A program made the translations under genes and the position numbers. The notes beneath the pieces were generated by a model, which was not told the origin of the DNA, searched no databases, and was given only the letters and a program-made list of their open reading frames with translations. A stretch of DNA of 64,000 nucleotides, taken from positions 4,030,001 through 4,094,000 of the forward strand of contig JANJGN010000052.1 in NCBI GenBank assembly GCA_026770705.1, given 5' to 3'. This stretch comes from Isurus oxyrinchus (Eukaryota). Shown piece after piece: positions 15,095 through 50,657 of the stretch; the stretch's first letter is position 1, and every line of letters begins with the position of its first letter.

Positions 15095-15447
15095 GTACTG
15101 AGGTAGTGCGGCACTGTCGGAGGTTCAGTACTGAGGGAGTGCTGCACTGTCGGAGGGTCTGAGCTGAGGGACTGTTGCACTGTCAGAGGGTCTGAACTGA
15201 GGGAATGCTGCACTTTCGGAGGCTCTGAACTGAGGGAGTGCTGCACTGTCGGAGGCTCTGAGATGAGGGAGTGCTGCACTGTCGGAGGGTTTGAACTGAG
15301 GGAGTGCTGCACTGTCGGAGGGTATGAACTGAGGGAGAGCTGCACTGTCGGAGGGTTTGAACTGAGGAAGTGCTGCACTGTCGGAGGGTCTGATCTGAGG
15401 GAGTGCTGCGTTGTTGGAGGGTTTGAACTGAGGGAGTGCTGTGCTGT
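15095..15447 (+). repeat. 33-bp minisatellite (variant)
   Basis: Tandem gaactgagggagtgctgcactgtcggagggttt. Confidence 0.9.
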
Positions 15448-15790
15448 CTAAAGAACATTGTACAAATTGCACAAAATTTCATCTGATGCCTGTGTCTCAT
15501 GCTAACATGAAGTTCATGCACACAACAGGAATATTTCTCGCTGTTTCTCTGCAGCAAGACAGCTTTGGTATCACACCACCCACTGGCAAGTGTGTGCAGC
15601 TACAATGTGACATGTTTACATTGGAAATTTCTATTATAAAGATGGACAGAGGAATTCATCTGATTGGAAAACGTGACAACAGGAAGTAATGTCTTTGAGC
15701 CAAGTATTTTGCAGCAAAACAAGAATTTTAATCTTTAAATATCTACAGAACAGGCTGAGCATTTTAATCACTTGAGTTAATCAATGTAAT

Positions 15791-15796
15791 TTTATT
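15791..15796 (-). promoter_or_regulatory. Candidate poly(A) signal of the activating Siglec-like gene
   Basis: AATAAA on the - strand about 385 nt past the stop codon. Confidence 0.35.
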
Positions 15797-16179
15797 CATA
15801 AGCCAAATGCTTCTTACAATCTATCGCAGCATGAAAAAGGTGCAGCATTCAGAAAGCTCATTCCAATCAGAGAACAGAGTTTAGCAACGTCACATTTCTG
15901 TTCATTCCTATTCGATGAACAATTTCAAAAGGAAATTGGACGGAAATTGGAAATAAATTTGCAGGGATACGGGGATAGAGCGGGGGATGGGACTGAGTGG
16001 ATTGCTTTACAGAGAGACAGCATAGACTCAATGGGCCAAATGTCCTCCTCCATTGCTGGAATGACTCGATGATACGGAGATGATTCTAACCAGGACACTG
16101 ACCAGTTTCATTACAACTTAACACAACATCACACGTTATTTGTCCGCACTGACTGACCAGATTGTTGCTGTACAAAGCT

Positions 16180-16319
16180 TTAAACAGTCTGTCGATTTCC
16201 TTTCACTGTTTGTCTCTCCCAGACACAGACTCCAGCGATAGTGATAACCACAGCCACAAGGAATATCACAGCTCGTATTCCCAGGATCAGGATCACGTGC
16301 AGAATCTCTCCTCCACTGT
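16180..16319 (-). CDS. Terminal TM exon with intramembrane Arg and short tail
   Basis: Acceptor tttctttctgtgtgttctctag; reads SGGEILHVILILGIRAVIFLVAVVITIAGVCVWERQTVKGNRQTV*; Arg codon at 16273-16275; no tyrosine in the tail. Confidence 0.8.
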
Positions 16320-17433
16320 CTAGAGAACACACAGAAAGAAATCATCACTGACTCTCCGCTTTCAATCTCTCACTCTGGCTGAACAATCAAGCTTCATATC
16401 ACTGCAACATTTGCTGTAATATTGACCCATTCACTGGGATTCAATGTGGAATGAATGTTTTCACTGTAAACACTCTAAGAGTGGACAATCGGAACTTTCC
16501 CCTTAGCATGGAACATTGGTGAGAATGGATCATTGTGCTGTTGGACTCTCTGTCCAATGTTTCTCTCCATCGCTGTGTACAGGATTGTGCTGTAGAAAAT
16601 TCTGGAAACGTTTAGTGCAGGGTGGAAATCCATCTCGGACGTGTGTGCGAATCGGGCAGGATCGAGATGGACTCCCCCACGGACTTACACCCCCCGCTTA
16701 ATAAACAGTTCCAATCTTTACCCAGAGAGAGGGGAGAATATGGAACTCGCTCCCACAGGGAATGGTTGAGGTGAATAGTAGCAAATTAGGAAGTGAAATT
16801 GCTTGAAAAGCTTGGAGATGCAAGGGTTAAGTGTTACCGTGCTACCACTGGTGGGAGAGTGTAACTACAGCGTGACGTTTACATAGGCAATCCCCATTAT
16901 GAACATGGACATCATGTGAAAAATGGGCACTGGAAAGCTGAGAACTTGATGTAAGCTTTTCAGCAACAGGAATTCCCTTCCTTAACCTCTCCACTTCCCT
17001 CTTATTCTCAGATACTCAAACAAAATTTCACACAAAATCACGTAAGGAGGAATTGGGACAGGTGACTGGTCAAAGAGTTAGATTTCAGGAAGGTTCTTAA
17101 AGTAGGATAGAGAGTTGGAGAGGCAGAGAGTATCTGTGAGTATCTCTGTGCATCTGAGTGTCTGTAATAGACTTTGCAATTTCCATATTCTTCCATAAAT
17201 ATGAAAGGGAACACAAATCCCAGAATCCAGGTCAACTCTCCGGTGCAGCACTGAGGGAGGTCAGGTAATCCACAGGGGAGTATGTGCTAGTGTGTTTGTT
17301 TGTGAGTGTGTCTTTGTGTGTGCTCATAGATGTGGGATTGTGTGTCTGCAGGTGTCTATTTAAGGCTGGATATTTATGTGTGTTTTTGTAGTGTTTCAAT
17401 CCGAGAGAGATGTTGAAGTTTGTCTTAACTAAC

Positions 17434-17585
17434 GTTCCACAGTGATGGTTATGAACCCCTCCACTGCTCCATGTTCATTCTCTGAGCACACTGATAGTCT
17501 CCAGTGTCCCTGGATGTAACGTGAGGAATCACCAACCACAGCTCATTGTTGGAACTTGTTCTGTTCATTGTGATATTCAGATGTC
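17434..17585 (-). pseudogene. Broken C2-set exon remnant (array-type C2)
   Basis: 3' half of the repeated C2 exon (HLNITMNRTSSNNELWLVIPHVTSRDTGDYQC); 1-nt deletion, 5' half missing, donor gttagt. Confidence 0.85.
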
Positions 17586-17908
17586 AGGACCGGACTCAAC
17601 AAGACAGATTGCAGGTTTACCAACAGAAAGTGAACAACAATTTATATTTAAAGGGAAGAGAGTGCTGGTTAATCAGCAAGTGGTCTCTGATTGGAGGAGG
17701 TGTTGCCATGGAAAATAATGTGTGTGAGATGTAAAGTTTAGACAGCTTGTCTCTTCATTCAGCAACAATCAAATAAAGATCAGTTAACTTCTATCGACTG
17801 TGAAGCACTTTGAGAGGCATGAGAATGTGGACACTGAGAACGGGCTGCACTGTCAGAGGGTCAGCGCTGAGGGAGTGCTGATGTAGAATGAAGGGTGTCT
17901 GTACTTAC

Positions 17909-18205
17909 CTTGCACAGTTAGTACGAGGGTCCGCTCCGATGAAACAGATGGATATCTCACTCTGCAGCTGAGAGTGTGTCTGTGGTGTTTGAGTGATGGG
18001 ATCAGGGTCAGAACAGAAGTATAGGTCAGAGTGACACCATGCTGAGTTACAGTGTTTGAGACTGATCCACGTACGTCAGTGGGAGTGTCCCAGGTTAAGA
18101 CAGGTGCTGCTGTTCCTTTGCACGTTGTGTTGAAGGTGCCGCTTACATCCACAGGCTTTCCTGCAATAATTTCAGCAGGGAATATCGTGGGTTTATCTGT
18201 GAAAT
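17909..18205 (-). CDS. Siglec C2-set domain 2 exon (activating paralog)
   Basis: 297 nt, AG/GT, phase 1-1; 92/99 aa identical to 38753-39049; B-strand Cys replaced by Gly. Confidence 0.85.
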
Positions 18206-18933: not shown

Positions 18934-19299
18934 CAGAAACGTGAAGCTGGGTTACAGGGTAATAGTTATGGCTCGGACCATTGTCAAATTCTATTCTGAA
19001 AAAATAAGGTCCCGCATCTTCCCGTCTGATGTTGTTTATAATCAGGGAACAGACGCCATCTTTCAGGTCTCCAGACAGCCGGGTCCGATGGTGGAACCGT
19101 GGTAACTCGTGACTGTGATCCTTGGAGTGAAAGGCTATAGACGATGTTCTCCATTCCTCATTATTAAACCAGACTCCACCTCGCGGTTGGTTTTCCAGAC
19201 ACGATGGATAACTGTAATGACATGGAATCTGTACACACGAACCTTCCTGCACTGTCACCTCTCGTGGATTGTCACCTTTCCACTCTTGCGAGGGTTCAG
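18934..19299 (-). CDS. Siglec V-set exon (activating paralog)
   Basis: 366 nt, AG/GT; Siglec Cys pattern SCVQIPC...CSL; essential Arg in YFFRIE. Confidence 0.9.
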
Positions 19300-19344
19300 C
19301 TGGGGAGAGAAATCTCAATATTTAACTCTGAATGGTTTGTGGAT

Positions 19345-21030: not shown

Positions 21031-21396
21031 CAGAAACATGAAGCTGGGTTTCAGGACGGTCGTTGTATCTATTCCTGCTGTCAAAATCTGTTCTGAATAA
21101 ATAATATCCTGCATCTTCCCATCTGATGTTGTTTATAATCAGGGAACAGTCACCATCTTTCAGGTCTCCAGAAAGCCGGGTCCGATGGTGGAACCGTGGT
21201 AACTCGCGACTGTGATCCTTGGAGTGAAAGGCTATAGACCATGTTTCCTAATTCCTTCTCATATACCAGATTCCAACAGGTGATCTCGGTACTAAATATG
21301 ATGGGTAGCTGTAATGACACGGAATCTGTACACACGAACCTTCCTGCGCTGTCACCTCTCGTGGAGTGTCACCTTTCCACACTTGTGGTAGTCCAG
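21031..21396 (-). pseudogene. Second V-set exon with one in-frame stop
   Basis: 366 nt with intact splice sites; TAG at 21248-21250 at the position of Trp in the other V exons; diverged loops. Confidence 0.88.
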
Positions 21397-25288: not shown

Positions 25289-25328
25289 CTTGGAGAAGTG
25301 ACAGGAGGAAGTAAGATTTCCCGATCAT
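25289..25328 (-). CDS. Leader (signal peptide) exon, activating paralog
   Basis: ATG MIGKSYFLLSLLQ + G|gtaata, phase 1; coding part identical to 34057-34096. Confidence 0.85.
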
Positions 25329-28430: not shown

Positions 28431-28560
28431 TGTGCTTTGTATAGAACTGATTTAAAGAGACAGTCCCAGTCGTTGGTCTAAGATTACAGTGGGCTCTGTG
28501 TCTGTGCTACACTGACTCTCTGCTATATGATAACCACAGTGTGATATTGTGTTATTGCAG

Positions 28561-34056: not shown

Positions 34057-34096
34057 ATGATCGGGAAATCTTACTTCCTCCTGTCACTTCTCCAAG
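34057..34096 (+). CDS. Leader exon
   Basis: MIGKSYFLLSLLQ + G|gtaaga, phase 1. Confidence 0.85.
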
Positions 34097-37000
34097 GTAA
34101 GATCATCATCAGCTCGGACAGATTTATGGTTAATAGTCTTTGTAAAAGAACATTCTTATTGACCTCTAATTGGGAACTGATTTAGCAGTGAGCCAGTGTA
34201 CAAACTCACACTATGTCCCATTCATCCATCACCCCTGTGCTCACTGATATACACTGACTCCCTGTCTGACAGCAGAATTGGAGGACAGCAGAGGCCTTGG
34301 AGGGTTGTAGGGGCTGGAGGAGTGTACAGGGATAGGCAGGTTTGTAGCAGCGAGAGCAGAATCTCAAAATTCAGGTGCTGTCAGACGTTGGTCAGTGAGC
34401 GATGGGGATTGATGGATTGAATAGAGAAGCAGGGATAAAAACTGGTGGGTGAAGCCTATCCTAATGAGAGTTATCCGATAGCAATAACCTGAAATTTGTA
34501 TCCTTTGCTGCCATTATTCAAAACTTCCCATGAAGACAGCACAGCAGCTCCTAGAATAGACAGGCTGTTCAGTGTCACACTTCCTGTCCATTCTCACCAT
34601 GCTAGATACTTCAATAAGGGAGCAAGATAACTGAAAGAGAGAAGGGAGGCAAAGCTGTCTGTGTGTAAAACTGTCAAATATTCTGAGTTATCATGAGTGT
34701 CTCTGATCTGCTGCAGAGTTTAAATTTCACAGAATCTGGGCACATTGCAGCTCAGAGAGAGACCATTGACTCACTGCCTGAAAGGGCGGTGGAAGCAGAT
34801 TCAACAGGAACTTTCAGAAGGGGAACTGGATAAATACTTGAAGGGAAATTTGCAGGGATGTGCGAAAGGTGCTGGAGAGGAATTGGGAAAGAGTCAGCAC
34901 ATGCACGATGGGTCAAACAAGCTCCTCCTGTGTTGTATCATTCAACAATCAGACAATTTAAGACCCTTGTCAGCAAATCTTCAGAATCCTGCTGAATCAC
35001 AGATATTTCAGAAGGACAGGGAACAAGAGGTTTCTGGTATCAGCGTTTCATGTGGGGCCCAGTTCAGTTTGAACAAAAAAAATGACAACAGCATCTTTGA
35101 AAGTCATGAACCCACCACAGCGGCACCTCCGACACATGCAGAGCTCAGGCTAGAGGCGCTTTGTTAGTGTGTTTCACAGTCTCTGCTGGAGTAGGGTCAG
35201 TGCTGAGCTTGGGGACAAGTCAGTCTACAATGCTGCATCGGAATCAACAATACAACAATATGGGGTTTGGATCAGAAATAATCCCTTAGACAATGAGAAT
35301 CCAAAGAGATTCCTCAGACAATGAGGATCCAAAGAGATTCCTTATTCCATTGGTTGTCTAACTGGGGTCCATGATTTTCCAAGGGGTCCTTGGCAGAATC
35401 AAATTATCGAGCAATAGTGTGTAAAATACCGGAGAGAACGGGAAAGGTGGGATCAATGGAAAACTGTTCACTCTGTTTACACTAATGGGAGTTAGTCTCA
35501 GTAATGGAGACCATGAAACTATCATCGATTGTCATACACACCCATCTGGTTCACTAATGGCCTTTAGGGAAGGAAATCTGCCGTCTATATCTGGTCTGGC
35601 CTACATGTGACTCCAGACTCATAGCAACGTGGTTCCTCTGAAATGTCCGAGCAAACCATCCAGTTCTCACCATGCTAGAAACTTCAATAAGGGAGTAAGA
35701 TAACTGAAAGAGAGAAGGAAGGTAAAGCTGCTCATGTGGATAGATGTCAAATATCCTGAGTGATCATGATTGTCTCTACTCTGCTACAGAGATTATGTCA
35801 CGGGACATTAGAGATGGGCAGCAAATGCTGGCCTTGGCAGCGACGCCCACATCCCATGAATGAATACATTTACAAAATCTTATTACTTGGAAGGTGCAAG
35901 TGCAGGTTGTTATGATCCTTGAGCAGACCCTCTCAGCACTGACCCTACTCCAGCAGACCCTGTGAAACACACTAACAAAGCGCCTCTCGCCTGAGCTCTG
36001 CATGTGTCGGAGGTGCCGCTGTGGTGGGTTCATGACTTTCAAAGATGGTGTTGTTTATTTGTTCAAACTGAACTGGGCCCCACACAAAACGCTGATACCA
36101 GGAACCTCTTGTTCCCTGTCCTTCTGAAATATCCGTGACTTCAGCAGGATTCTGAAGAGTTGCTGATGGAGGAACAGACACCCAATTTTTTTTGATAATT
36201 TACAGTTAGGAACCAATAATATTTTGTTTCAAGTAGACAAGGTTTGAGATTTAAGACGCTTGCAAAGAGAATAGAGCTACAAGATTCCATGGCTTTTAAA
36301 CAAACAAAAATAAACTTTACTGCACCAGCTCAGAAAGATAAAATAATTCACAATGTCCACCTTATACCCTAACATTCTGGATTAATATGAGCTCATGTGA
36401 ATTAACAGGCAAACTGTGGTCTCACAGCCAAACTACTCATTAAATTGTAAACACGACCAAGATAGAGCCCATGGATTTCACAACAACCCACCCGGACATC
36501 AGTGAACACTGTCAGTCAACCAATCTCACTGAAACTCTGTTTCTCTCATGAGGGATTCCAGTCTTCAACTTCGAAGATCTTGCCTCGGAATTCTCTCCAA
36601 AAGTCGCTTCAACTCGGATGGCCTCAGTGACGTTCCACCTCACAGGGTTTCCATCTCTTCTCCTGAGGCTCCATTGCCCTGGATTCCCGACTATATACTC
36701 AAGCACCACTAGGTTTAGATGAAAGGTTTTGATTGACTGGGTAGACAGAGAATGTTCCCTCTTGTGGGCAGGAGAATAACTAGAGGCCGAGTGATTGGTG
36801 ATTCCTTAAACATTGAAGAGGGAATGAACACCAATCAGATTGAATCAGATTAGCCAATCAGCTGTGTTGAAGAGCAGACAGGAATGTTAGGCTAATTAGT
36901 GATTCATGACGGTGATAATGGGGGGAGTTCTGAGGGCTCCTAATCCATTGTCCTGTCTTGTAAATCAGCACTGAATGGATCTCAATTGGTGCGTCTTGTA

Positions 37001-37528
37001 GACACTGTGTTGGGTGGAAGACTGGCTTCACTAAGGGGAAGTGGTAGCAGAGAGGTATTGTCACTGGGCTAGTATTCCAGAGGCCCAGGGTGATGCTCTG
37101 GGGCCCTGGGTGTGAATCTTATCACAGCAGATGAATGGGATTAAAAAGCCTGGTTCACTGATCACCTATAGGGAAGGAAATCTGCCACTCTTACCCAGTC
37201 TGGCCTACATGTCACTTCAAACCCAAAGCTATGTGGTTGACTCTTAAATACCTCTGATGGACATGGGATGGGTAATAAATCCCATGAATGAATAATTTGA
37301 AAAAAAGCTAAACAGTGTCCTGAGGACCATGAGCTAATGTAGAATGAACTTGTCCACTCCTGCGTCCAGGATTCTCTTCCATCCATTGTGAAACCTTGAG
37401 GAGTTCCTTGTGTGTCCTGTAGATGGTCCACACTGCAGCCAATGTGCCCCAGTGATGGAGGGGGTGGATATCAAGTCTAATGGATTGAAAAAACATCCAG
37501 AATTAAGTATTGATATTTCTCTCCACAG

Positions 37529-37894
37529 TTGGACTGTCACAAGAGTGGAAAGGTGACACTCCACGAGAGGTGACAGCGCAGGAAGGTTCCTGTGTACAGA
37601 TTCCATGTCATTACAGTTATCCATCACATTTGGAAAAGCAACCACGAGTTGGAATCTGGTTTAATAATGAGGAATGGAGAACATCGTCTATAGCCTTTCA
37701 CTCCAAGGATCACAGTCACGAGTTACCTCGGTTCCACCATCGGACCCGGCTGTCTGGAGACCTGAAAGATGGTGACTGTTCCCTGATTATAAACAACATC
37801 AGACGGGAAGATGCAGGACCTTATTTTTTCAGAATAGAATTTGACAGCAGAAATAAATACAGCTACTATCCTGTAACCCAGCTTCACGTTTCTG
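37529..37894 (+). CDS. Siglec V-set sialic-acid-binding exon
   Basis: QEWKGDTPREVTAQEGSCVQIPCHYSYP...GDCSL...YFFRIEFDSRNKYSY; Arg codon at 37831-37833. Confidence 0.93.
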
Positions 37895-38752
37895 GTAAGT
37901 GCTGTGTTATAATTACTCAACAATTCACATCCAACACTCAATGGGAAACAACACAAACTGTGACGTTTACATATTAACACAAAACACAGCTTATTATAAC
38001 ACACTGTCTGATTCTCAATCACCTGCTGACAGCTTCCAGTTCAGTCCTAAAGCAACCTCTAAAATCACTTTAATATCAATGATGAAAAGCATTAACTGTA
38101 TTATCAGGTTATCCACTCCCATCAATCTCTCCTGTCCTGTTTAAAAGTCTGACTTATCGATAAAAGAAAGATGTGCATTTCTGCAGCGCAATTTACCACC
38201 TCAGGAGGATCCAAATCCCTTCACAGCCAATGAAATTATTCCTGAATTGTAGTCACAGATGTTAAACACAGCAGTCAGTTTGTGCACAGCAAGATCCAAC
38301 AAACCACAAGGTGATAAATCACCCAGATCACTGAGGAAATGAGAAGCCAGTGAACTCAAACCTCTGGTCTGATGAAGAGTCATACGGACTCGAAACGTTA
38401 ACCCTGTCTTCCTCTCCACTGATACTGTCAGACCTGCTGAGTCTTTCCAGCAATTTTTGTTTTTGTTTCAGATTTCCAGCATCCGCAGTATTCTGCTTTT
38501 AACTCCAATCTCTGGTCTGAGCCTCTTCTCTCATCCAGTGTTCTCAATTCACATGTCTCGGAGTGAACGTGTATTAAGCTGAGAGACAGAAACACTACTG
38601 CCAAAGAGCAAGAAAATCTTTCCTGATCATTGTAACCTCTCAGTTCTGATATCATCCTTGTAAAAGTGCTTTCTCTTGTGGGACTGTGGTTTCTATTTGA
38701 ACTGATGCTTCACGTTATATTTCTCTAAAAGGATCCATTCTCTGTCTGTTAG

Positions 38753-39049
38753 ATTTCACAGATAAACCCATGATATTCCCTGCTGAAATTATTGCAGGAA
38801 AGCGTGTGGATGTAAGCTGCACCTTCAACACAATGTGCAATGGAACAGCAGCACCTGTCTTAACCTTGGACACTCCCACTGACGTACGTGGATCAGTCTC
38901 AAACACTGTAACTCAGCATGGTGTCACTCTGACCTATACTTCTGTTCTGACCCTGATCCCATCACTCAAACACCACGGACACACACTCAGCTGCAGAGTG
39001 AGATATCCATCTGTTTCATCGGAGCGGACCCTCGTACTAACTGTGCAAG
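38753..39049 (+). CDS. C2-set domain 2 exon
   Basis: 297 nt, phase 1-1; VSCTFNTMC...LSCRV; C-strand Trp replaced by Leu. Confidence 0.9.
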
Positions 39050-39268
39050 GTAAGAATGGACACCCTTCATTCTACATTAGCTAGAAAGCTCTACATAGTA
39101 CATTGCAAGATCCCACAACTGCATTGCGTTTAGCAACAAATCAATAGTCTTTAACTGATACAAATTCACCTCTGACACTGCAGCAGTCCCTGAATACTGA
39201 TTCTCCAACACTGCAGCACTCCCTCAGTACTGAGTCTTGTTCACAATGAAATCTTTAATTGTTCTTAG

Positions 39269-39361
39269 ATGTACCACAGAATCTCTCATTTACTTCGCTT
39301 GATATGATTAATGCTTCATCGATCAATATAATTGAGGGGTTCATAACCATCACTGTGGAAT
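39269..39361 (+). CDS. In-frame 31-codon mini-exon (internally deleted C2)
   Basis: Both splice sites kept; 189 nt deleted between two GAGGGG motifs. Confidence 0.6.
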
Positions 39362-40020
39362 GTGAGTTAATGCAAACTTCAACATCACTCACACACACGC
39401 ACACACACACACACACACACACATGCAGAAACACACACAATCTCAACTCACACAAGCACACACACACACACATGCATAGACAGACACACGTGCGCACACA
39501 CACACAAACACACATGAGTGCGTGCACACACACAGATCCTTATTTTACAGAAACATACACACACAAGCCAACACACACATACACACACAAAAACATGTGG
39601 GTTCCCTCTCCTCTCCCAGTGCTGCACTCAGTATCAGCTCCGAATCTGTGTTGATGAAAGGTAAACTCCAGATCATCAAGACACTGAACTGGATGGAGCA
39701 ACCTCCTGAAGAGTGAATTGTAGATTTACCCCTCAGTGCTCCATTGGTCAAATACAATTCATTGCCTTTGAAGCCCTTGGGGACATCCTGAGGATCTGAA
39801 AGGGAGTTTCCTGCATTCTAGATGGACACCTCCACTGGTGGGAGAATGTAACTGCAGTGTGACAGTTTACATAGGCAGTGCCCATTGTAAATGTGAAATA
39901 AGTTCTTATCCTGAGGGAATGTACCTGGAAATGCATTCAGACATCAGATACAGAGACATGATGCATGGAGTCTTGCTGTGCACTATATTTGCTCATATTA
40001 AAATCTTTCTATGTTTATAG

Positions 40021-40302
40021 ATGCACCACGGAATCTCTCAATTACTTCTCTTGATATGATTAACGCTTTATCGATCGATGTAATTGAGGGGAATTCTGCA
40101 GTGATAATCTGCTCTGTCGAGAGCTTCCCAGCTTCTAACCTGACGTGGCGACATCTTAATGTCCCAATGAACAGAACAAGTTCCAGCAATGAGCTGTGGT
40201 TGGTGATTCCTCACGTTACATCCAGGGACACTGGAGACTATCAGTGTGTGGCAGAGAATGTATATGGAGCAGTGGAGGGGTTCATAACCATCACTGTGGA
40301 AC
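40021..40302 (+). CDS. Repeated C2 exon 1
   Basis: 282 nt, phase 1-1; IICSVESFPASNLTW...DTGDYQCVAEN. Confidence 0.9.
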
Positions 40303-40328
40303 GTGAGTTACTGCAAACTTCAACATCA

Positions 40329-40365
<37 letters not shown>

Positions 40366-40972
40366 ACACACGTGCACACTACTCATAAACATACACACAC
40401 ATTCACTCATGCACAGAAATATACACAAAGACACACTCACATATGCGCAAACACATACACACATGCACACACAGACGCATGCGTGCATACTCACACAAAC
40501 ACACTCACATGTGCAGAAACACAAACACAAACACATACACACACATGAGGTCCCTCTCCTCTCTCAGTGCCGCACTGGAGTCTTGGTATCAGCTCTGATT
40601 CTGTGTTGAAGGAAGGTAAACTCCAGATCAGCAAGACCCTGAATTGGATGAGCAACCTCCTGAACAGAGAAATGTAAATTTACCCCTCAGTGCTCCATCA
40701 ATCAAATACAATTCATTCCCGTAAATCCCTTGGCAAAATCTTGAGGATGTGAAAGTTTCTTTCATTCTAGGTGGACAGCACCTCTACTGGTGGGAGAATG
40801 TAACTGTAGTTTGACTGTTTACATAGGCAGTGCCCATTATAAATTTGACAGTGGAAGTTATATGGAGGGAAGGTACCTGGAATTGCATACAGACATCAGA
40901 TACAGAGAGATGATGCATGGAGTCTTGCTGTAAATTGTGCTTGCTCACATTAAACACTTGATTTGTTTTTAG

Positions 40973-41254
40973 ATGCACCACAGGATCTCTCATTTACTTC
41001 ACTTGAAATGATTAATGCTTCATCAATCAATATAATTGAGGGGAATTCTGCAGTGATAATCTGCTCTGTCGAGAGCTTCCCAGCTTCTAACCTGACGTGG
41101 CGACATCTTAATGTCCCAATGAACAGAACAAGTTGCAACAATGAGCTGTGGTTGGTGATTCCTCATGTTACATCCAGGGACACTGGAGACTATCTGTGTG
41201 TGGCAGAGAATGAACATGGAGCAGTGGAGGGATTCATAACCATCACTGTGGAAT
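40973..41254 (+). CDS. Repeated C2 exon 2
   Basis: 282 nt; extra Cys (TSCNNEL). Confidence 0.9.
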
Positions 41255-41997
41255 GTGAGTGCACACAGACATCTACATCACACAAACACACACACACATG
41301 CAAAAACACTCATGTGTAGACACAAACATGCACGCTTACACACAAACATACGTTCAAACACATACACAGAAACACACACAAACTCAACTCACACATACAA
41401 TCATTCATGCGCACACGTAGACACACGTATACACACACACTCCCTCAAGCACAGATGTACACACGCAGACCCACATACACACGCGTGCCCACACATGCGC
41501 AGACAGACACGCGCATACACACAAATACAAACTCACTTGTGCAGAAATACACACACACACACAAGTGTGAGATCCCTCTCCTCTCTCAGTGCTGCACTGG
41601 AGTCTTGGTATCAGCTCTGATTCTGTGTTGAAGGAAGGTAAACTCCAGATCAGCAAGACCCTGAATTGGATGAGCAACTTCCTGAACGGAGAATTGTAGA
41701 TTTACTCCTCAGTGCTCCATCGATCAAATACAATTCACGGGCTTTCAATCCCTTGGGGGCATCTTGAGAGTGTTAAAGGATGTTTGTTTCATTCTAGGTG
41801 GACAGCAACTCTGTTGGTGGGAGAATGCAACTGCAGTGTGACAGTTTACATAGGAAGTGCCCATTATAAATGTGACAGTATTTTTTCCTGCGGGAAGGTA
41901 CCTGGAAATGCATTCCAACATCAGATACAGAGAGATGATGCATGGAGTCTTGCTGTGCACTGTGCTTGCTCACAGTAAAATCTTTATTTGTTTTTAG

Positions 41998-42279
41998 ATG
42001 CTCCACAGAATCTCTCAATTACTTCTCTTGATATGATTAATGCTTCGTCGATCAATATAATTGAGGGGAATTCTGCAGTGATAATCTGCTCTGTCGAGAG
42101 CTTCCCAGCTTCTAACCTGACGTGGCGACATCTTAATGTCCCAATGAACAGAACCAGTTCCAACAATGAGCTGTGGTTAGTGATTCCTCACGTTACATCC
42201 AGGGACACTGGAGACTATCAGTGTGTGGCAGAGAATGAACATGGAGCAGTGGAGGGGTTCATAACCATCACTGTGGAAT
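41998..42279 (+). CDS. Repeated C2 exon 3
   Basis: 282 nt, AG/GT. Confidence 0.9.
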
Positions 42280-43019
42280 GTGAGTTAACGCAAACTTCAA
42301 CATCACTCACACGCACACAGACACACACACACACACACACACAGACACATGTAGGCACACACATGCATAATTATACACACACAGTCATACACGTACAAAC
42401 ACATACACAGGAAAATACACACCCATCTCAAACACACACATATTCATGCCCACACATAGACACACACATGCACATACTCTCACTCATGGACAGACGTAGA
42501 CACACAGACACACGCGCATGCACACACACAGATACATGTGTGCATACACACACAAACACACTCACATGTGCAGTAACACAAACACACACATACACACGCG
42601 TGAGTTCTCAGTGCTGCACTGGAGTCTTAGTATGAGTTCCGATTCTGTGTTGAAGGAAGGTAAACTCCAGATCAACAAGACCCTGAATCGGATGAGCAAC
42701 CTCCTGAACAGAGAATTGTAGACTTACCCCTCAGTGCTCCATCGATCAAATACAATTCATTGCCTGTCAAGCCCTTGGGGACATCCTGAGGATGTGAAAG
42801 CAAACTTCTTTCATTCTAGATGGGCAACACCTCTGCTGGTGGGAGAATGCAATTGCAGTGTGACAGTTTACATAGGCAGTGTCAATTATAAATGTGCCAT
42901 AAGACCTTATCCTGAGGGAAGTTACCTGGAAATGCATTCAGACATCAGACACAGAGACATGATGCATGGCGTCTTGTGCACTATGTTGCTCACGTTAAAA
43001 TCTTTATATATATATATAG

Positions 43020-43301
43020 ATGCATCATTGAATCTCTCAATTAATTCTCTTGATATGATTAACGCTTCATCAATCAATATAATTGAGGGGAATTCTGCAG
43101 TGATAATCTGCTCTGTCGAGAGCTTCCCAGCTTCTAACCTGACGTGGCGACATCTTAATGTCCCAATAAACAGAACAGGTTCCAACAATGAGCTGTGGTT
43201 GGTGATTCCTCACGTTACATCCAGGGACACTGGAGACTATCAGTGTGTGGCAGAGAATGAACATGGAGCAGTGGAGGGGTTCATAACCATCACTGTGGAA
43301 C
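43020..43301 (+). CDS. Repeated C2 exon 4
   Basis: 282 nt; polypyrimidine tract replaced by (TA)n. Confidence 0.8.
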
Positions 43302-43347
43302 GTGAGTTAATGCCAACTCAACATCTCTCTCATACACGCACACACAC

Positions 43348-43405
<58 letters not shown>

Positions 43406-44114
43406 ATGTGTAGACACATACGTGCACATTTACACACACAGTCATACACGTGCAAAAACAGACACAGAAACACACATACACTCAACTCACACGCACACAC
43501 TCACACAGGCACACATATAGACATACACATGCACTCACGTTCACTCATGCACAGACGTATACACAAAGACACACTCACATATGCGCAAACACATACACAC
43601 ACGCACACACAGACACATGCGTGCATACACACACAAACACACTCACATGTGCAGAAACACAAACACACACATACACACGCATGAGGTCCCTCTCCTCTCT
43701 CAGGGCTGCACTGGAGTCTTGGTATCAGCTCCGATTCTGTGTTGAAGGAAGGTAAACTCCAGATCAACAAGACCCTGAATTGGATGGAGCAACCTCCTGA
43801 ACAGAGAATTGTAGACTTACCCCTCAGAGCTCCATCGATCAAATACAATTCATTGCCTATCAAGCCCTTGGCAAAATCCTGAGGATGTGCAAGGAAGTTT
43901 CTTTCATTCTAGGTGAACAGCACCTCTACTGGTGGGAGAATGTAACTGTAGTTTGACTGTTTACATAGGCAGTGCCCATTATAAATTTGACAGTGGAAGT
44001 TATATGGAGGGAAGGTATCTGGAAATGCATACAGACATCAGATACAGAGAGATGATGTATGGAGTCTTGCTGTGCATGCTGCTTGCTCACATTAAAAACT
44101 TTATTTGTTTTTAG

Positions 44115-44396
44115 ATGCTCCACAGAATCTCTCAATTAATTCTCTTGATATGATTAATGCTTCATCGATCAATATAATTGAGGGGAATTCTGCAGTGATA
44201 ATCTGCTCTGTCGAGAGCTTCCCAGCTTCTAACCTGACGTGGGGACATCTTAATGTCCCAATGAACAGAACAAGTTCCAACAATGAGCTGTGGTTGGTGA
44301 TTCCTCATGTTACATCCAGGGACACTGGAGACTATCAGTGTGTGGCAGAGAATGAACATGGAGCAGCGGAGGGATTCATAACCATCACTGTGGAAC
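44115..44396 (+). CDS. Repeated C2 exon 5
   Basis: 282 nt, AG/GT. Confidence 0.9.
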
Positions 44397-45373
44397 GTGA
44401 GTTAACACAAGCTTCAACATTACTCTCACATATACACAGTCACACTCATACACACACACACACACACACACGTGCACACAAACAAGCATTCATGTGCAAT
44501 CCCACATGTCCACAGGTGTGTACACCTGCATGCTCACACACAGAAGGAAACATACACAGAATCACACGTGTGCTTGCTCACACACACACACACAGACATG
44601 TGTGAGTTGTCTGTTCTCCCTGTGCTGCACTGGAGCGTTGCTCCAGATTCTGCTCTGAAACACTGACGACATCAGCTGAACAAGACCCTGTATTGGACGA
44701 GCAGCCCCCTGCACAGAGAATTGTAGGTTTATCACCCCATTATTCTAAAGCAATTCCTCCACTGTCAAATCTCCATAAATATCCTGATGATGTGAAAGAC
44801 ATTTTCTTTTCTTCTAGCCCGACAGTGTCTCCTCTGGTGGAAGGCTGTAATTACAGCGTGACAGTTTACATATCCACATGCAGCAAGAGCTGAACAACAC
44901 TCAGCTTGGGCTGAGACAATTAATGCATCACAAGTACCAGGCAGTGATCATGTCCAACAAGAGAGAATCTAACCATCTCCCCTTGATGTTCAGTGAGTTT
45001 ACTATCACAGAATCCCCCACAATCAACATCCTGGGGGATGTTAACCAAACAACTAACTGGACCGGCCATAAATACTGTGGCTACAGGAGCCGGTCAGAGG
45101 CTGGGAATTCTGTGGGGGTGAAAAACTCACCACCACCTCCTCAAGGGCAATTAGGGATGGGTAATAAATGCTGGTCTAGATAGATACAGCTACTTCCCAT
45201 GAATGTACAAAAAGAAAAACACCGGCAGTGACCATTATAAAAGTTGACATAGGAACTTAAAACAGGAAAGAACTCTTGAAATGCACATAGACACCAAATA
45301 GAGAGAGATGTATCATGGAGTCTTGCTGTGCACTGTGTTTGCTCACAATGAAACCACCTTTATTTGTATCTAG

Positions 45374-45655
45374 ATGCACCACGGAACCCATCAATTACTT
45401 CTCTTGATATGATTAACGCTTCATCGATCAATATAATTGAGGGGAATTCTGCAGTGATAATCTGCTCTGTCGAGAGCTTCCCAGCTTCTAACCTGACGTG
45501 GCGACATCTTAATGTCCCAATGAACAGAACAAGTTCCAACAATGAGCTGTGGTTGGTGATTCCTCACGTTACATCCAGGGACACTGGAGACTATCAGTGT
45601 GTGGCAGAGAATGAACATGGAGCAGTGGAGGGGTTCATAACCATCACTGTGGAAC
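45374..45655 (+). CDS. Repeated C2 exon 6
   Basis: 282 nt, AG/GT. Confidence 0.9.
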
Positions 45656-46414
45656 GTGAGTTACTGCAAACTTCAACTTCACTCACACACACACACACAC
45701 ACACACATACACACACACACACACGTGTAGGCACACACATGCACACTTATACACACACAGTCATACACGTGCAAACACATACAGAGGAATATATATACAC
45801 AACTCACACACACACACACATTCATGCCCACACATAGACACACACATGCACATTCACTCACTCTTGGACAGACATTGACACACAGACATGCGTGCATGCG
45901 CACACACAGATACATGTGTGCATACACACACAAGCACACTCACTTCTGCAGAAACACAAACACTCACACACTCTCACACATACACAAATATGAGTTCCCT
46001 CTCCCCTCTCAGGGTGCACTGGAGTCTCGGTATCAGCTCTGATTCTGTGTTGAACGAAGGTAAACTCCAGATCAACAAGTCCCTGAACTGGAGGAGCAAC
46101 TTTCTGAACAGAGCATGGTAGATTTACCCCTCAGTGCTCCATCAATCAAACATTGCCTGTCAAGCCCTTGGCGAAATCCTGAGAATATGAAAGCAAGCTT
46201 CTTTCATTCTAGAGTGACAACACCTCTACTGGTGGGAGAATGCAATTGCAGTGTGACAGTTTACATAGGCAGTGTCCATTAAAAATGTGGCATAAGACCT
46301 TATCTTGAGGGAAGTTACCTGAAAATGCATTCAGACATCAGATACAGAGACATGATGCATGGAGTCTTGCTGTGCACTATGTTTGCTCACGTTAAAATCT
46401 TTATATGTTTTTAG

Positions 46415-46696
46415 ATGCACCACGGAATCTCTCAATCAATTCTCTTGATATGATTAACGCTTCATCGATCAATATGATTGAGGGGAATTCTGCAGTGATA
46501 ATCTGCTCTGTCGAGAGCTTCCCAGCTTCTAACCTGACGTGGCGACATCTTAATATCCCAATGAACAGAACAAATTCCAACAATGAGCTGTGGTTGGTGA
46601 TTCCTCACGTTACATCCAGGGACACTGGAGACTATCAGTGTGTGGCAGAGAATGAACATGGAGCAGTGGAGGGGTCCATAACCATCACTGTGGAAC
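46415..46696 (+). CDS. Repeated C2 exon 7
   Basis: 282 nt, AG/GT. Confidence 0.9.
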
Positions 46697-47361
46697 GTGA
46701 GTTACTGCAAACTTCAACATCACTCACACACACACACATACACACACAGACACACACACACACACACGCACACACACACACACGCACACACATACACATA
46801 AACAGGTGCACGTAAACATGCGTTCATATTTAATCCCATGTCTGCACAGGTGTGCACGCCTGTATGCTCACACACAGAAGCATACATACAGAATCACACG
46901 TGTGCTTGCTCACACACACACACAGACATGTGTGCGTTGTCTGTTCTCCCTGTGCTGCACTGGAGTGTTGCTGCAGATTCTGCTCTGAAACACTGACGAC
47001 ATCAGCTGAACAAGACCCTGTATTGGACGAGCAGCCCCCTGCACAGAGAATTGTAGATTTATCACTCAATACCCCATTATTCTAAAGCAATTCCTCCACT
47101 GTCAAATCCCTGTGAACATCCTGATGATGTGAAAGACATTTTCTTTTCTTCTAGCCTGACAGTGTCTCCTCTGGTGGAAGGCTGTAATTACAGCGTGACA
47201 GTTTACATATCCACACGCAGCAAGAGCTGAGCAACACTCAGCTTGGGCTGAGAAATGACAATTAATGTTCATGCCACACAAGTACCAGGGAGAGCTGTTC
47301 CTTGTATTGACCCTTGGGATTGTTTATCCCAACTTGATAGGGCAAAGGGGGCCCAGGTTGT

Positions 47362-47428
47362 GACTATCAGTGTGTGGCAGAGAATGAACATGGAGCAGTG
47401 GAGGGGTTCATAAGCATCACTGTGGAAT
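47362..47428 (+). pseudogene. 3' remnant of a C2 exon
   Basis: DYQCVAENEHGAVEGFISITVE|gtgagt; 5' part missing. Confidence 0.8.
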
Positions 47429-48247
47429 GTGAGTGTGGAGATACATTTGTTTGTTTGTTGTCTCCGTGGTCTCCGTGGAGCCATTGGGATCGTGTTGTTT
47501 TTAATCCAGTTTTCTTCAATCCTCGCTCAGTCCACGTTATCCACACATCCAATTTTTCCTCTCCCTTTCTGTTTTTGCTCTCAGTTTCTCCTTCAATGGT
47601 TGTCAGGACAAGGCTGTCAGGTCTTCGTTTCCAATCTCCATACTTGATGACCTTTCTCTCTCTAACTGTCCTGAACAACCCTTTTAATTGCTGAACTTCT
47701 CATTCTTTAATTGATAAATATTATATATAAATGTTACATGGATTACTTTGAAATGCAATACCTGTATTCATAAATTGCTTAGAAATGACTAAACATTCAA
47801 CAGCCAATGAAGCATTATCGAAGTGAGCTCACTGTTGTAAAGGAGGAAACACAGGTACTGATTTGTACACAGCAAGATCCCACAAACCACCGTGTCTTAA
47901 TGACCTGATAGGCGATTATTTCAATGAGGTTGGTTGTTTAATGTGTAGAGAGACTACATACCCTTTAGGGAGGGAAGCATGTCTCGATGTGGATGTGACT
48001 CCAGTCTCAGACACCAACATGGTTAACTCACACCTGCCCTGTGAACTGGTCTCCCAGTTTGGGACAAACCAGTGGATCAGGAGGAAGACCCCCCACCACC
48101 TTCTCAAGGGGAAACTAGGGATGGACAATAAATGTCAGCATTGCCCGAGAATGAGTATTTAAACACTGAGTGAGTGTATCGCTTCTCGAGATACATCGGA
48201 GCATCATTGTAAACCTGTAGTGCAGTAATTAATGGCTGTTTTTACAG

Positions 48248-48344
48248 GTAGAGACTCCAGTAAAGGGACAGTAGGATTGTTCACGGCTGGGATCATGTTG
48301 AGTGTTTTCCTGGCTGGAATCTTCATCTTCATCTGTGTGAGAAA
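48248..48344 (+). CDS. Transmembrane exon (uncharged)
   Basis: 97 nt, phase 1-2; RDSSKGTVGLFTAGIMLSVFLAGIFIFICVRK. Confidence 0.88.
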
Positions 48345-49038
48345 GTAAGTCTGAAGATTTAACTTGATTTTAATATAAACATTTGCTTCAATGTTCTTTC
48401 CTGAAGTCGGTGATTGTTTCCCTTGTGTTAAGCGCCAGATGCCTCTCCCTAACTGGTCTCTTTATCCGTTATGATCCAGAGAGTGTTTTTCATTGCCCGT
48501 TATCCAGATGAATAATAATCAGTTGCTGTGATCTGGAAGGTGCTGCCTGAAAGGGCGCTGGAAGCAGATTCAATAGGAACTTTCAAAAGGGGAATTGGAT
48601 AAATACTTGAAGGGGGAACATTTGAAGGGCTATGGGGGGAAGAGCAGGGGTGGAGGGGGGGTAAAAGATATGGCGTGTTATTATAATGATATTATACCTT
48701 AGGCTTATTTACTGTATAAGACAGAAAACACCAATCACTCATAGGGGATTTGGTGAGAATATTAATGATTTGTTTATCAAGACTCGGCACGAGAACAGTT
48801 ATACATACGAAGAAAGCTTGAAGGCATCAGAGCTGTGAGTGTGTGTTCTGCTCAAAGCAAATGTCAAACTGAGATTGGATCACATGACACACTTCCATTA
48901 TAGTGATGTCACGCTGATACCCCTTATTGGAACTAGAGACAGTCCAGTCGTTGGTGTAAGGTTACAGTGGGCTCTGTGTCTGTGCTGCACTGACTCTCTG
49001 CTATATGATAACCACAGTGTGATATTGTGTTATTGCAG

Positions 49039-49120
49039 GAGAAAGACAGCAATGGAGGAGAGAGGTTCAGGGACCAATTACATTGCATTGACCCTCAGGT
49101 CACTCTCTGTGAAGCACCAG
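49039..49120 (+). CDS. Cytoplasmic exon 1
   Basis: 82 nt, phase 2-0; RKTAMEERGSGTNYIALTLRSLSVKHQ. Confidence 0.82.
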
Positions 49121-49332
49121 GTACAGGAACTGTTTACACTCACTCCAAAGCTTCAACCTCAGTGTGTACACAACACGTATACCAGATTCTCAGCCGGGTT
49201 ACACACAGATATCGCCCTGTGAAGTCAGCAATGGCTCAGTGGTCAGCACTGTCTCTCGCTCCCTGCCTCTGTCTCCCTCCATCACTCGCTCTTTGACCAG
49301 AAACCTGAACACAATAATGACAAGGCACCTGA

Positions 49333-50220
49333 TGTCAGTACTGAGGGAGTGCTGCACTGTCAGAGGGTCAGTAGTGAGGGAGTGCTGCACTGTCGGAGTG
49401 TCAGTACTGAGGGAGTGCTGCACTGTCGGAGGGTCAGTACTGAGGGTGTGTTGCACTGTCAGAGGATCAGTACTGAGGGAGTGCTGCACTGTTGGAGGGT
49501 CAGTACTGAGGGAGTGTTGCACTGTCAGAGTGCCAGTACTAAGGGAGTGTTGCACTGTCAGAGGGTCAGTACTAAGGGAGTGCGGCACTGTCGGAGGGTC
49601 AGTACTGAGGGAGTGTTGCACTGTCAGAGGGTCAGTACTGAGGGAGTGCTGCACTGTCGGAGGGTCAGTACTGAGGGAGTGCTGCACTGTCAGAGGGTCA
49701 GTTACTGAGGGAGTGCTGGACAGTCGGTGGGTCAGTACTGAGGGAGTGCTGCACTGTCTGATGGTCAGTACTGATGGTGTGCTGGACGTTTGGAATATCA
49801 GCACTGAGGCAGTGCTGCACTGTCAGAGGGTCAGTACTGAGGGAGTGCTGGACTGTCAGAGGGTCAGTACTGAGGGAGTGCTGCACTGTCAGAGGGTCAG
49901 TACTGAGGGAGTGCTGCACTGTCAAAGGGTCAGTACTGAGGGAGTACTGCACTGTCGGAGGGTCTGTAGTGAGGGAGTGCTGCACTGTCAGAGGGTCAGT
50001 ACTGAGGGAGTGCTGCACTGTCAGAGGATCAGTATTGAGGGAGTGCTGCACTGTCAGAGGGTCAGTATTGAGGGAGTGCCGCACTGTCAGAAGGTCAGTA
50101 CTGAGGGAGTGCTGCACTGTCAGAGGGTCAGTGCTGAGGGAGTGCTGCACTGTCAGAGGGTCAGTTGTGAGGGAGTGCTGCACTGTCAGAGGGTCAGTAG
50201 TGAGGGAGTGCTGCACTGTT
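49333..50220 (+). repeat. 33-bp minisatellite in the last intron
   Basis: About 27 units. Confidence 0.92.
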
Positions 50221-50408
50221 GCAGTGCGATAGAGATTAAATTATTAAGAGAGAGAGAAAGCGAGATAGAAAGATGACAGAGAAAGAGAGTGAAAAAAAGG
50301 CTTAAACGCTCTGAGCCACGACTGACACTAACGAGGCTGCAGAATAATTTAACCCTATCAGTGCCAGTAAATGATGTGAGGATGTCTTCTGTTTCCATTT
50401 CTCTGTAG

Positions 50409-50657
50409 GGTAAACAGAATGTGCTGATTACTGAGCCCCAGAACACAACCAGAGACACAACTAGTGAGGGGGAGACCCCAGCTCCCCGGGATCTCTCTGA
50501 AGGTCCAGTGGGAGGCGATGTTGGACATGGGAACCCCGACAATACCGACGACCTTCTCTACGCCAACATCAACTTTTCAAAGCTGCCCAGCGGTGACAGG
50601 ACTGTGCACAGGAGCGAGGACACGGAATACACACAGATCAGGTTCCAGAAAAACTGA
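50409..50657 (+). CDS. Terminal cytoplasmic exon with ITIM and ITSM-like motif
   Basis: DDLLYANINF and EDTEYTQIRF before the stop; same arrangement as CD33-related Siglec tails. Confidence 0.9.
   Translation, partial: GKQNVLITEPQNTTRDTTSEGETPAPRDLSEGPVGGDVGHGNPDNTDDLLYANINFSKLPSGDRTVHRSEDTEYTQIRFQKN

What the first reader, a model, noticed from the sequence alone, without database searches (positions are those of the whole stretch)
16180..16319. Hidden activating TM exon with an N-terminally placed Arg
Seen: ILHVILILGIRAVIFLVAVVITIAGVCVW follows a strong acceptor, is phase-compatible with the C2 exons and shows no similarity to the two other TM exons; the ORF track reads this region only in another frame. 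Known: an Arg in the outer part of the TM couples LILRA, GPVI and FcalphaRI to FcR-gamma, and Siglec-14 uses a TM Arg with DAP12. Inference: a TM module grafted onto a Siglec ectodomain, since the intron upstream still carries C2-array intron remnants (about 17220-17430).
Basis: partly seen in the sequence, partly recalled or inferred. Interest (0 to 1): 0.8.

Follow-up and report, generated by a model that had tools for sequence, protein, structure and literature searches.

The report
Shark activating-type Siglec membrane exon
This is the real, spliced last exon of a shark Siglec-like immune receptor gene; it gives the receptor a membrane anchor with a conserved arginine and almost no tail, the usual build of an activating receptor, and the same exon type is already annotated in other sharks.

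Summary
The exon is real. On the minus strand, 16319-16180 is open in phase 1. It encodes DSGGE, a 26-29-residue hydrophobic helix with one Arg (codon 16275-16273), a 12-residue tyrosine-free tail and a stop. Contigs of four runs from two samples join 16319 to the C2 exon donor at 17909 with GT..AG ends. They skip a frameshifted relic of a C2-array exon.

A search of 1.84 billion proteins with the 45 exon residues gave 10 hits, 9 of them true. With follow-ups, 15 shark proteins from 7 species carry the cassette. All 15 keep the Arg. Fourteen have it at the C-terminus with no tyrosine after it.

Their ectodomains are of at least three kinds: Siglec/CD33-like, CD22/CEACAM-like multi-Ig, and CD2/SLAM-like. 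The neighbouring head-to-head gene has a near-identical ectodomain and an ITIM/ITSM tail, so the two form a paired-receptor locus.

Adaptor coupling is inferred. FcR-gamma/zeta type is favoured by the Arg's position. This copy may be damaged: an upstream V exon holds a stop, and a canonical C2 cysteine reads Gly where all RNA contigs read Cys.

The scan found this exon type before on other DNA of this genome. Automatic annotation shows it in other sharks.

The parts
16180..16319 (-). Coding part of the terminal exon. It encodes (D)SGGE, a TM helix with Arg, the tail ERQTVKGNRQTV and the stop TAA at 16182-16180.
   Evidence: Acceptor use at 16319. Homologues. Hydropathy.
16273..16275 (-). Arg codon (CGA) of the TM helix. 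It is the 8th of 26 hydrophobic residues counted from Val, or the 11th of 29 counted from Ile.
   Evidence: The Arg is kept in 15 of 15 homologues.
15775..16179 (-). 3' UTR of the same exon, with AATAAA at 15796-15791. The stretch 15912-15768 is homologous to the DNA just after the neighbour gene's ITIM exon.
   Evidence: Contigs run unbroken over 16005-16296 and 15883-16085. The exact 3' end is not determined.
16320..17908 (-). Intron removed in the RNA-like contigs (GT at 17908-17907, AG at 16321-16320).
   Evidence: joint 16319->17909, skips 1589 bases, ends CT..AC on the + strand.
17432..17585 (-). Relic of the 3' half of a C2-array exon. It has a net 1-base loss near 17485, no recognisable 5' half or acceptor, and lies inside the intron, so it is skipped.
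   Evidence: Skipping is shown by the joint.
17909..18205 (-). C2-set exon (phase 1-1). It reads Gly where the canonical B-strand Cys is expected (codon holding 18140).
   Evidence: Pfam C2-set_2 at 3.3e-7. Joints at both ends.
18934..19299 (-). V-set exon of Siglec type, with YFFR aligned to Siglec-5. The donor at 18934 is used. The acceptor at 19299 is predicted.
   Evidence: Pfam V-set 1.3e-11 and Ig_CD22 1.8e-10. PDB best match Siglec-5 at 2.2e-14. Joint 18205->18934.
21031..21396 (-). Upstream V exon copy with intact ag/gt sites and an in-frame TAG at 21250-21248. Probably a pseudo-exon.
   Evidence: No reads were laid here.
25289..25328 (-). Predicted leader exon (MIGKSYFLLSLLQ plus G, donor gtaa).
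   Evidence: tblastn gives 13 of 13 identical to the start of P0012. Sequence. No reads were laid here.
34057..50657 (+). Partner gene B, head to head. Leader 34057-34096, V 37529-37894, C2 38753-39049, a C2 array, then a last coding ORF at 50421-50657 with LLYANI and TEYTQI (ITIM- and ITSM-like).

Best explanation
Window 16319-16180 (minus strand) is the coding part of the last exon of a Siglec-like receptor gene of a shark. The gene reads leader, V-set domain, C2-set domain, then this exon. The exon supplies five stalk residues, one membrane helix with a single arginine about a third of the way in from the outside, a 12-residue tail without tyrosine, and the stop. The exon is one copy of a conserved cassette that sharks use as the C-terminal module of several Ig-receptor families. 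Shown here: the exon, its splicing, the open frame across three exons, the invariance of the Arg, the sharing across ectodomain types, and the adjacent ITIM/ITSM gene with a near-identical ectodomain. Inferred: the arginine docks onto the paired membrane aspartates of a dimeric signalling adaptor. That docking would let the receptor reach the surface and send an activating signal that opposes the inhibitory neighbour, as in a paired receptor. The position of the Arg in the top half of the helix favours an FcR-gamma/zeta-type adaptor over DAP12. Whether this very copy still makes a working protein is open.
For: Splicing: the joint 16319->17909 (GT..AG) is seen in 4 of 4 runs, one contig each, with shorter sides of 31, 28, 23 and 58 letters. 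The joint 18205->18934 is seen in 4 of 4 runs (7 contigs, sides 18-29). Depth on the exon is 425-547 in X1 against 0-8 in the intron at 16761-17405. The frame is open from the V exon to the stop across both joints.

Family: Pfam gives V-set, Ig_CD22 and C2-set_2. The best solved relatives are Siglec-5, CD33, sialoadhesin and Siglec-8/7/10.

Cassette: there are 10 hits at E<=1e-3 among 1.84e9 proteins. Eight hold it at the C-terminus and one holds it inside a probably mis-joined model. One hit is a spurious repeat protein. P0011-P0016 were added. The Arg is present in 15 of 15, and 14 of 14 C-terminal copies have no Tyr after it. Cassette identity is 62-82% where ectodomains are unrelated.

Partner gene: the V exons have pS 0.178 and pN 0.067. 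The C2 exons differ at 8 of 297 bases.

Mechanism by analogy: passages of PMC13107469 say DAP12 partners have a central Lys, while receptors with an Arg in the top half of the TMD use zeta/gamma. Passages of PMC13358205 and PMC6288428 describe the paired-receptor build.
Against: No adaptor binding, surface expression or signalling was or could be tested.

The runs are only guessed to be RNA, and all are contigs. Three of the four are one sample. Only 2 of the 4 joint contigs reach the 31-letter criterion.

The contigs differ from the window at 5 sites in the C2 exon. All five are nonsynonymous and include Gly to Cys at the canonical cysteine. No contig in any run shows the window's Gly. The contigs also differ at 2 sites in the tail and stop. 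They may therefore come from an allele or a close paralogue, and earlier notes of this scan report further copies in this genome.

An upstream V exon with intact splice sites holds a stop. Leader-to-V splicing was not seen because the stretch laid ended at 19450.

A 2014 survey found no FcR-gamma in sharks (PMC4016189, passages). Only an unchecked note of this scan says the gene exists in this genome.

An Arg this near the outer edge could snorkel to the head groups without a partner.
Confidence: 0.72

Rival explanations
1. The exon type is functional, but this copy belongs to a decaying gene. The spliced contigs would then come from an intact allele or a near-identical paralogue elsewhere in the genome.
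For: The upstream V exon has an in-frame TAG and intact splice sites. Gly replaces the canonical Cys of the C2 domain, and 4 more private nonsynonymous changes are present. In all 4 runs every contig reads the family-consensus residues. A relic half-exon lies in the intron.
Against: The three RNA-supported exons are open and have canonical splice sites. Intron contigs at low depth match this locus at 99-100% (17012-17159 with 0 of 148 other letters, 17149-17268 with 0 of 120), so the locus or a near-twin is transcribed. The leader can join the second V exon in frame if the first is skipped. Ig domains without the canonical disulphide can still fold (recalled).
Confidence: 0.3
2. The cassette couples to a DAP12- or DAP10-like adaptor, as mammalian activating Siglecs do, and not to FcR-gamma/zeta.
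For: Mammalian Siglec-14, -15 and -16 signal through DAP12 (passages of PMC6288428 and PMC13358205). If the helix is counted from Ile, the Arg is the 11th of 29 residues, which is not far from central.
Against: The review passages say all known DAP12 partners have a centrally placed Lys, whereas an Arg in the top half goes with zeta/gamma. Here the residue is Arg in 15 of 15 copies and lies 18 residues from the inner boundary.
Confidence: 0.2
3. The module is only a membrane anchor. The short receptor would then be a non-signalling decoy, or an adhesion form, that competes with the inhibitory neighbour for ligand. The Arg would sit at the interface without a partner.
For: The tail has no motif. 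The Arg is close to the outer boundary if the bilayer core is counted as 20 residues from the inner Trp.
Against: A plain anchor would not keep 62-82% identity, with an invariant Arg, across shark orders and across unrelated ectodomains. In proteins with a comparable V domain the cassette is conserved as well as or better than that domain.
Confidence: 0.08

Closest known systems
Primate Siglec-5/Siglec-14 and Siglec-11/Siglec-16 paired receptors
   Same: A Siglec V-set plus C2 ectodomain nearly identical to that of an adjacent ITIM-bearing gene. The activating-type partner has a basic TM residue and a short tail. The ectodomain exons look homogenised: the C2 exons differ at 8 of 297 bases against 33 of 365 for the V exons.
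   Different: It arose independently in sharks. The TM cassette shows no similarity to anything else in the window and is shared with non-Siglec receptors. The genes are head to head. The adaptor is unknown and is perhaps FcR-gamma/zeta rather than DAP12. Here the C2 exon, not the V exon, is the more alike.
FcR-gamma/zeta-coupled receptors with an Arg in the upper TM
   Same: A single Arg in the top half of a type I TM helix and a short tail without motifs (review passages).
   Different: No sequence relationship was shown and the ectodomains differ. Association was not tested.
RefSeq models in other sharks: S. canicula 'sialic acid-binding Ig-like lectin 13' and '14 isoform X2' (P0012, P0013), S. 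torazame 'CD33-like' (P0001)
   Same: The same architecture: leader, V, C2, cassette. The junction ..VQ|DSGGE.. is the same. The leader is 13 of 13 identical. Identity is 84-86% for C2 and 81-82% for the cassette.
   Different: V identity is only 63-75%, so these are paralogues or orthologues in other species. The names are automatic and no function was tested.
Teleost and amphibian paired Ig receptors with charged TM residues (NITR, LITR, Xenopus FcR-like and CEACAM families)
   Same: The same logic: activating and inhibitory forms share ectodomains. For the Xenopus families only the listing abstracts were seen (PMC5112662, PMC2413239). NITR and LITR are recalled.
   Different: These are different gene families. 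No sequence comparison was made here.

Membership tests
Siglec family (CD33-related-like) | N-terminal V-set domain most similar to Siglec V domains | tested here: met
   Pfam V-set 1.3e-11 and Ig_CD22 1.8e-10. The 17 best PDB matches are all Siglecs, led by Siglec-5 at 2.2e-14.
Siglec family (CD33-related-like) | Conserved Arg of the F strand (YFFR) that contacts sialic acid. The role of the residue is recalled. | tested here: met
   YFFRIE aligns with YFFRVE of Siglec-5.
Siglec family (CD33-related-like) | Sialic-acid binding | not testable with these tools
   Needs glycan binding assays.
Activating member of a paired receptor | Basic residue inside the TM helix | tested here: met
   Arg at codon 16275-16273, inside a stretch with 19-residue hydropathy up to 2.95. 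It is kept in 15 of 15 homologues.
Activating member of a paired receptor | Short cytoplasmic tail without ITIM or ITAM | tested here: met
   The tail is ERQTVKGNRQTV followed by a stop. There is no Tyr after the Arg in 14 of 14 C-terminal homologues.
Activating member of a paired receptor | Inhibitory counterpart with a highly similar ectodomain | tested here: met
   For gene B the V exons differ at 33 of 365 bases and the C2 exons at 8 of 297. Its last coding ORF holds LLYANI and TEYTQI.
Activating member of a paired receptor | Association with an ITAM adaptor and an activating signal | not testable with these tools
   Needs co-expression and signalling assays.
FcR-gamma/zeta-coupled class | Arg, not Lys, in the top half of the TM | tested here: met
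   The Arg is the 8th of 26 or the 11th of 29 hydrophobic residues. The criterion comes from passages of PMC13107469.
FcR-gamma/zeta-coupled class | The adaptor gene is present and expressed in the same species | not tested
PMC4016189 (2014) found none in sharks. No query sequence could be used here.
DAP12-coupled class | Centrally placed Lys in the TM | tested here: not met
   The residue is Arg and lies in the outer third.
Shark TM-Arg terminal cassette (this scan's working name) | ..L(H/D)V.LIL(G/V)IRA.IF...V..T.AG.CV.. at the C-terminus, after a phase-1 junction | tested here: met
   The window copy is 62-82% identical to 14 proteins. The junction VQ|D SGGE is as in P0001 and P0012.

The most novel reading that the evidence does not exclude
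One conserved terminal exon cassette (TM helix with an invariant Arg, tyrosine-free tail) has been moved among at least three Ig-receptor families of galeomorph sharks: Siglec/CD33-like, CD22/CEACAM-like and CD2/SLAM-like. It would serve as a universal plug into a single FcR-gamma-type adaptor. If so, paired activating and inhibitory receptors, and the gamma-chain system that a 2014 survey dated to bony fish, were already in place in cartilaginous fish.
Probability: 0.45. Interest if true: 0.55.

Novelty: new member of a known kind. Interest (0 to 1): 0.3.

Why it matters
It shows that this shark genome holds an activating-type Siglec-like gene beside an inhibitory twin. This is the same paired-receptor design known from primate Siglec-5/14, reached independently. 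The membrane module is a reusable cassette found on unrelated ectodomains in seven shark species. That gives comparative immunologists a simple handle, one short exon, for listing candidate activating receptors in cartilaginous fish. It also gives them a way to test which adaptor chain those receptors use. As a single finding it is modest. The exon type is already in automatic annotation of other sharks. The scan met it before on other DNA of this genome. This copy may be damaged. Four searches of the held library found no paper that describes activating Siglecs in sharks.

Tried and rejected
Paralogue in the window: blastn and tblastn of the exon against the window found none. Local alignments to the two other TM regions and to the ITIM exons gave nothing above shuffles, apart from the 3' UTR piece at 15912-15768.

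ITIM relic: I considered that the exon might sit on a relic of an ITIM exon, because 'ALYSNN' lies downstream in another frame. The DNA alignment does not support this.

Pfam on the exon alone gave only chance-level matches, E 0.17 and 0.21.

Reading 19288 as the V exon acceptor was rejected. The loose letters there match gene B's V exon start at 37528, so those contigs are paralogue transcripts. The likely acceptor is at 19299.

Word-index searches find few candidates, so the species range is a lower bound: 5 candidates (3 passed), 14 (5 passed) and 3 (2 passed). No ray, skate or chimaera protein appeared. With a 40-45-residue query this says little.

The literature searches for adaptors in sharks gave only the 2014 negative survey. 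Searches found no paper on shark activating Siglecs.

DNA of the homologous exons in other sharks could not be fetched. So exon phase, flanking-intron similarity and synonymous/nonsynonymous rates of the cassette were not tested.

Supplementary files were not asked for.

Full report
OBSERVATION. On the minus strand the window reads ...tgatttctttctgtgtgttctctag|AC AGT GGA GGA GAG ATT CTG CAC... from 16319 downward. The open frame gives (D)SGGEILHVILILGIRAVIFLVAVVITIAGVCVWERQTVKGNRQTV and then TAA at 16182-16180. At 70 aa or more the ORF list shows only another frame here. The exon has no relative elsewhere in the 64 kb and no similarity to the other TM regions. Mean hydropathy over 19 residues reaches 2.95. 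The single Arg (CGA, 16275-16273) is the 8th of 26 hydrophobic residues counted from Val, or the 11th of 29 counted from Ile. It lies 18 residues above the inner Trp-Glu boundary.

SPLICING. One run search gave 22 runs, all kept as contigs and mostly 'RNA?' by guess. I laid X1-X3 (one sample, organism A) and X5 (organism B) on 15600-19450.

- A joint 16319->17909 that skips 1589 bases, with CT..AC ends (GT..AG on the minus strand), is present in 4 of 4 runs. Each has one contig, and the shorter sides are 31, 28, 23 and 58 letters. Two of the four meet the table's 31-letter rule, one in each sample.
- A second joint, 18205->18934, is also in 4 of 4 runs (7 contigs, sides 18-29).
- Depth is exon-shaped. 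In X1 it is 425-547 on the TM exon, 660-822 on the C2 exon, and 0-8 over 16761-17405. This, together with the canonical joints, argues that the runs are RNA.
- Contigs run unbroken through the stop into the 3' UTR (16005-16296 and 15883-16085), and no joint leaves the exon downstream. It is therefore the terminal exon. An AATAAA lies at 15796.
- With these joints the frame is open from the V exon to the stop. This was a frame check only, and the joined sequence was not searched.

THE GENE. The V exon (19299-18934) matches Pfam V-set and Ig_CD22, and the next exon (18205-17909) matches C2-set_2. The best solved relatives of the V exon are Siglec-5, CD33, sialoadhesin and Siglec-8/7/10, and YFFR aligns with that of Siglec-5. 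A leader, MIGKSYFLLSLLQ with a phase-1 donor, lies at 25328-25289. It is identical in 13 of 13 residues to the start of an S. canicula model.

Between the leader and this V exon lies another V exon copy (21396-21031). It has intact splice sites but an in-frame TAG at 21250-21248.

Inside the intron before the TM exon, 17585-17432 is the 3' half of a C2-array exon. It is 88-93% identical to the array units of the neighbour and has a net 1-base loss near 17485. Its 5' half and acceptor are unrecognisable. The RNA joint skips it.

Homology to the neighbour gene runs over 19360-17877 and 17585-17290. It resumes at 15912-15768, which matches the DNA just after the neighbour's ITIM exon (50707-50854, score 148 against at most 30 for shuffles). 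The TM exon therefore sits in about 1.4 kb of unique DNA between two blocks of shared ancestry.

THE PARTNER. Gene B lies head to head on the plus strand. It has the same leader (34057-34096), a V exon (37529-37894), a C2 exon (38753-39049) and a long C2 array. Its last coding ORF (50421-50657) holds LLYANI and TEYTQI, which fit the ITIM and ITSM patterns as I recall them. The V exons differ at 33 of 365 bases (pS 0.178, pN 0.067). The C2 exons differ at only 8 of 297 bases, and 7 of these are nonsynonymous. This is the layout of a paired receptor.

THE CASSETTE ELSEWHERE. A phmmer search with the 45 exon residues against 1.84 billion representatives gave 10 proteins at E<=1e-3. Eight carry the module at their very C-terminus. 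One (P0010) has it inside what looks like a mis-joined model. One (P0008) is a low-complexity repeat protein and is spurious. A cluster look-up added P0011. Three word-index searches with the cassette regions of P0001, P0003 and P0007 added P0012-P0016.

The 15 true proteins come from Scyliorhinus torazame, S. canicula, Chiloscyllium punctatum, C. plagiosum, Hemiscyllium ocellatum, Rhincodon typus and Mustelus asterias. All 15 keep the Arg. Fourteen read ILGIRA and one reads ILVIRA. None of the 14 C-terminal copies has a tyrosine after it.

Their ectodomains are of several kinds:
- Siglec-like V-C2, with the same junction ..VQ|DSGGE.. as the window (P0001, P0012, P0013).
- V-V or V-C2 followed by array C2 domains (P0002, P0003).
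- A single Siglec-type V domain (P0005).
- CD22/CEACAM/FCRL-like multi-Ig chains (P0004, P0006, P0014).
- CD2/SLAM/CEACAM-like two-domain proteins (P0007, P0009, P0016).

The window's cassette is 62-82% identical to all of them, although most ectodomains share nothing detectable with this gene. Within C. punctatum the cassette is 90-98% identical across Siglec-13-like, CD22-like, CEACAM5-like and sialoadhesin-like models. I cannot tell gene conversion from lineage-specific expansion. The source names are automatic.

Long activating forms with array C2 domains exist (P0002, P0003). The relic half-exon in the window's intron is therefore better read as a lost stalk domain of such a form than as a trace of a recent graft at this locus.

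HOW IT MOST LIKELY WORKS. The build is shown: a basic residue in the helix, a short motif-free tail, and an inhibitory twin next door. The function is inferred by analogy with the paired-receptor model described in PMC13358205 and PMC6288428 (passages). In that model the Arg pairs with the two membrane aspartates of a dimeric adaptor, which allows surface expression and ITAM signalling. Passages of PMC13107469 state that known DAP12 partners have a central Lys. They also state that receptors with an Arg in the top half of the TMD (NKp30, NKp46, CD89) use zeta/gamma. On that criterion the shark cassette fits FcR-gamma/zeta better.

Against this, PMC4016189 (passages) found no FcR-gamma in shark data in 2014.

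STATE OF THIS COPY. The contigs laid on the C2 exon differ from the window at 17981, 18070, 18117, 18140 and 18154. All five changes are nonsynonymous and move toward the residues of the other shark proteins. They include Gly to Cys at the canonical cysteine. In all four runs every contig covering 18140 reads Cys. In the tail the contigs read TGA instead of TAA, so the stop is kept, and Ser instead of Asn. No difference is listed inside 16197-16319 among the 40 rows shown, but 48 rows were not shown.

Low-depth intron contigs match the window at 99-100%: 0 of 148, 0 of 120 and 1 of 138 other letters. This locus or a near-twin is therefore transcribed. With the stop in the upstream V exon, a damaged copy remains a serious rival (0.3).

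COMPARISON AND VERDICT. This is a new member of a known kind. It is an activating-type partner in a paired Siglec-like locus, carrying a cassette that automatic annotation already shows in other sharks. Earlier notes of this scan (s1-300793, s1-871670, s1-868598, s1-871938) describe the same cassette on other DNA of the same genome. Four searches of the held library found no paper on it. Interest is 0.3.

LIMITS. The reads call covered only 15600-19450.

Noticed in passing
window 27169-27405, 28451-28600, 30104-30340 (+): Two further ITIM/ITSM-type cytoplasmic ORFs (..LLYANPQV..TEYAQIRF..) and a TM-region look-alike of gene B lie on the plus strand between the two divergent leader exons (25.3 and 34.1 kb). 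They look like orphan 3' parts of a third gene or relics of a duplication.
   Followed up: no
window 38867 (gene B C2 exon): Gene B reads Leu (VLTLDT) where gene A and the other shark proteins read the conserved Ig Trp (VLTWDT). Seven of the 8 A/B differences in this exon are nonsynonymous.
   Followed up: partly
window 18934/19288 (table 5c): Contigs in X1 and X3 join a V exon donor to 11 letters that equal the start of gene B's V exon, followed by V exon sequence. This suggests transcripts of a paralogue with two V domains in tandem, as in S. torazame P0002.
   Followed up: partly
window 15600-15915: Contigs in X1, X2 and X5 cover this stretch and then diverge at 15915 into sequence absent from the window. 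The stretch is homologous to DNA after the ITIM exons (50707-50854 and 31067-31226). It is a shared 3' UTR piece or a repeat.
   Followed up: partly
window 15094-15448, 26140-27010, 29660-29950, 49335-50225, 57590-58475: Arrays of a 33-base satellite, open in several frames (..STDPPTVQHSL..), occur in both orientations around the receptor genes.
   Followed up: no
window 17406-17534: Depth is very high here (3117 in X1, 94601 in X2). It comes from transcripts of array-type C2 exons of paralogues laid on the relic. In X1, X3 and X5 all of these contigs carry an extra A behind 17486, which the window lacks.
   Followed up: partly
window 48880-49080 (+): The region taken as gene B's TM exon translates to VVGVRLQWALCLCCTDSLLYDNHSVILCYC followed by RRK. 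It holds several polar and charged residues, so it is an odd membrane helix. Its exon limits were not resolved.
   Followed up: no
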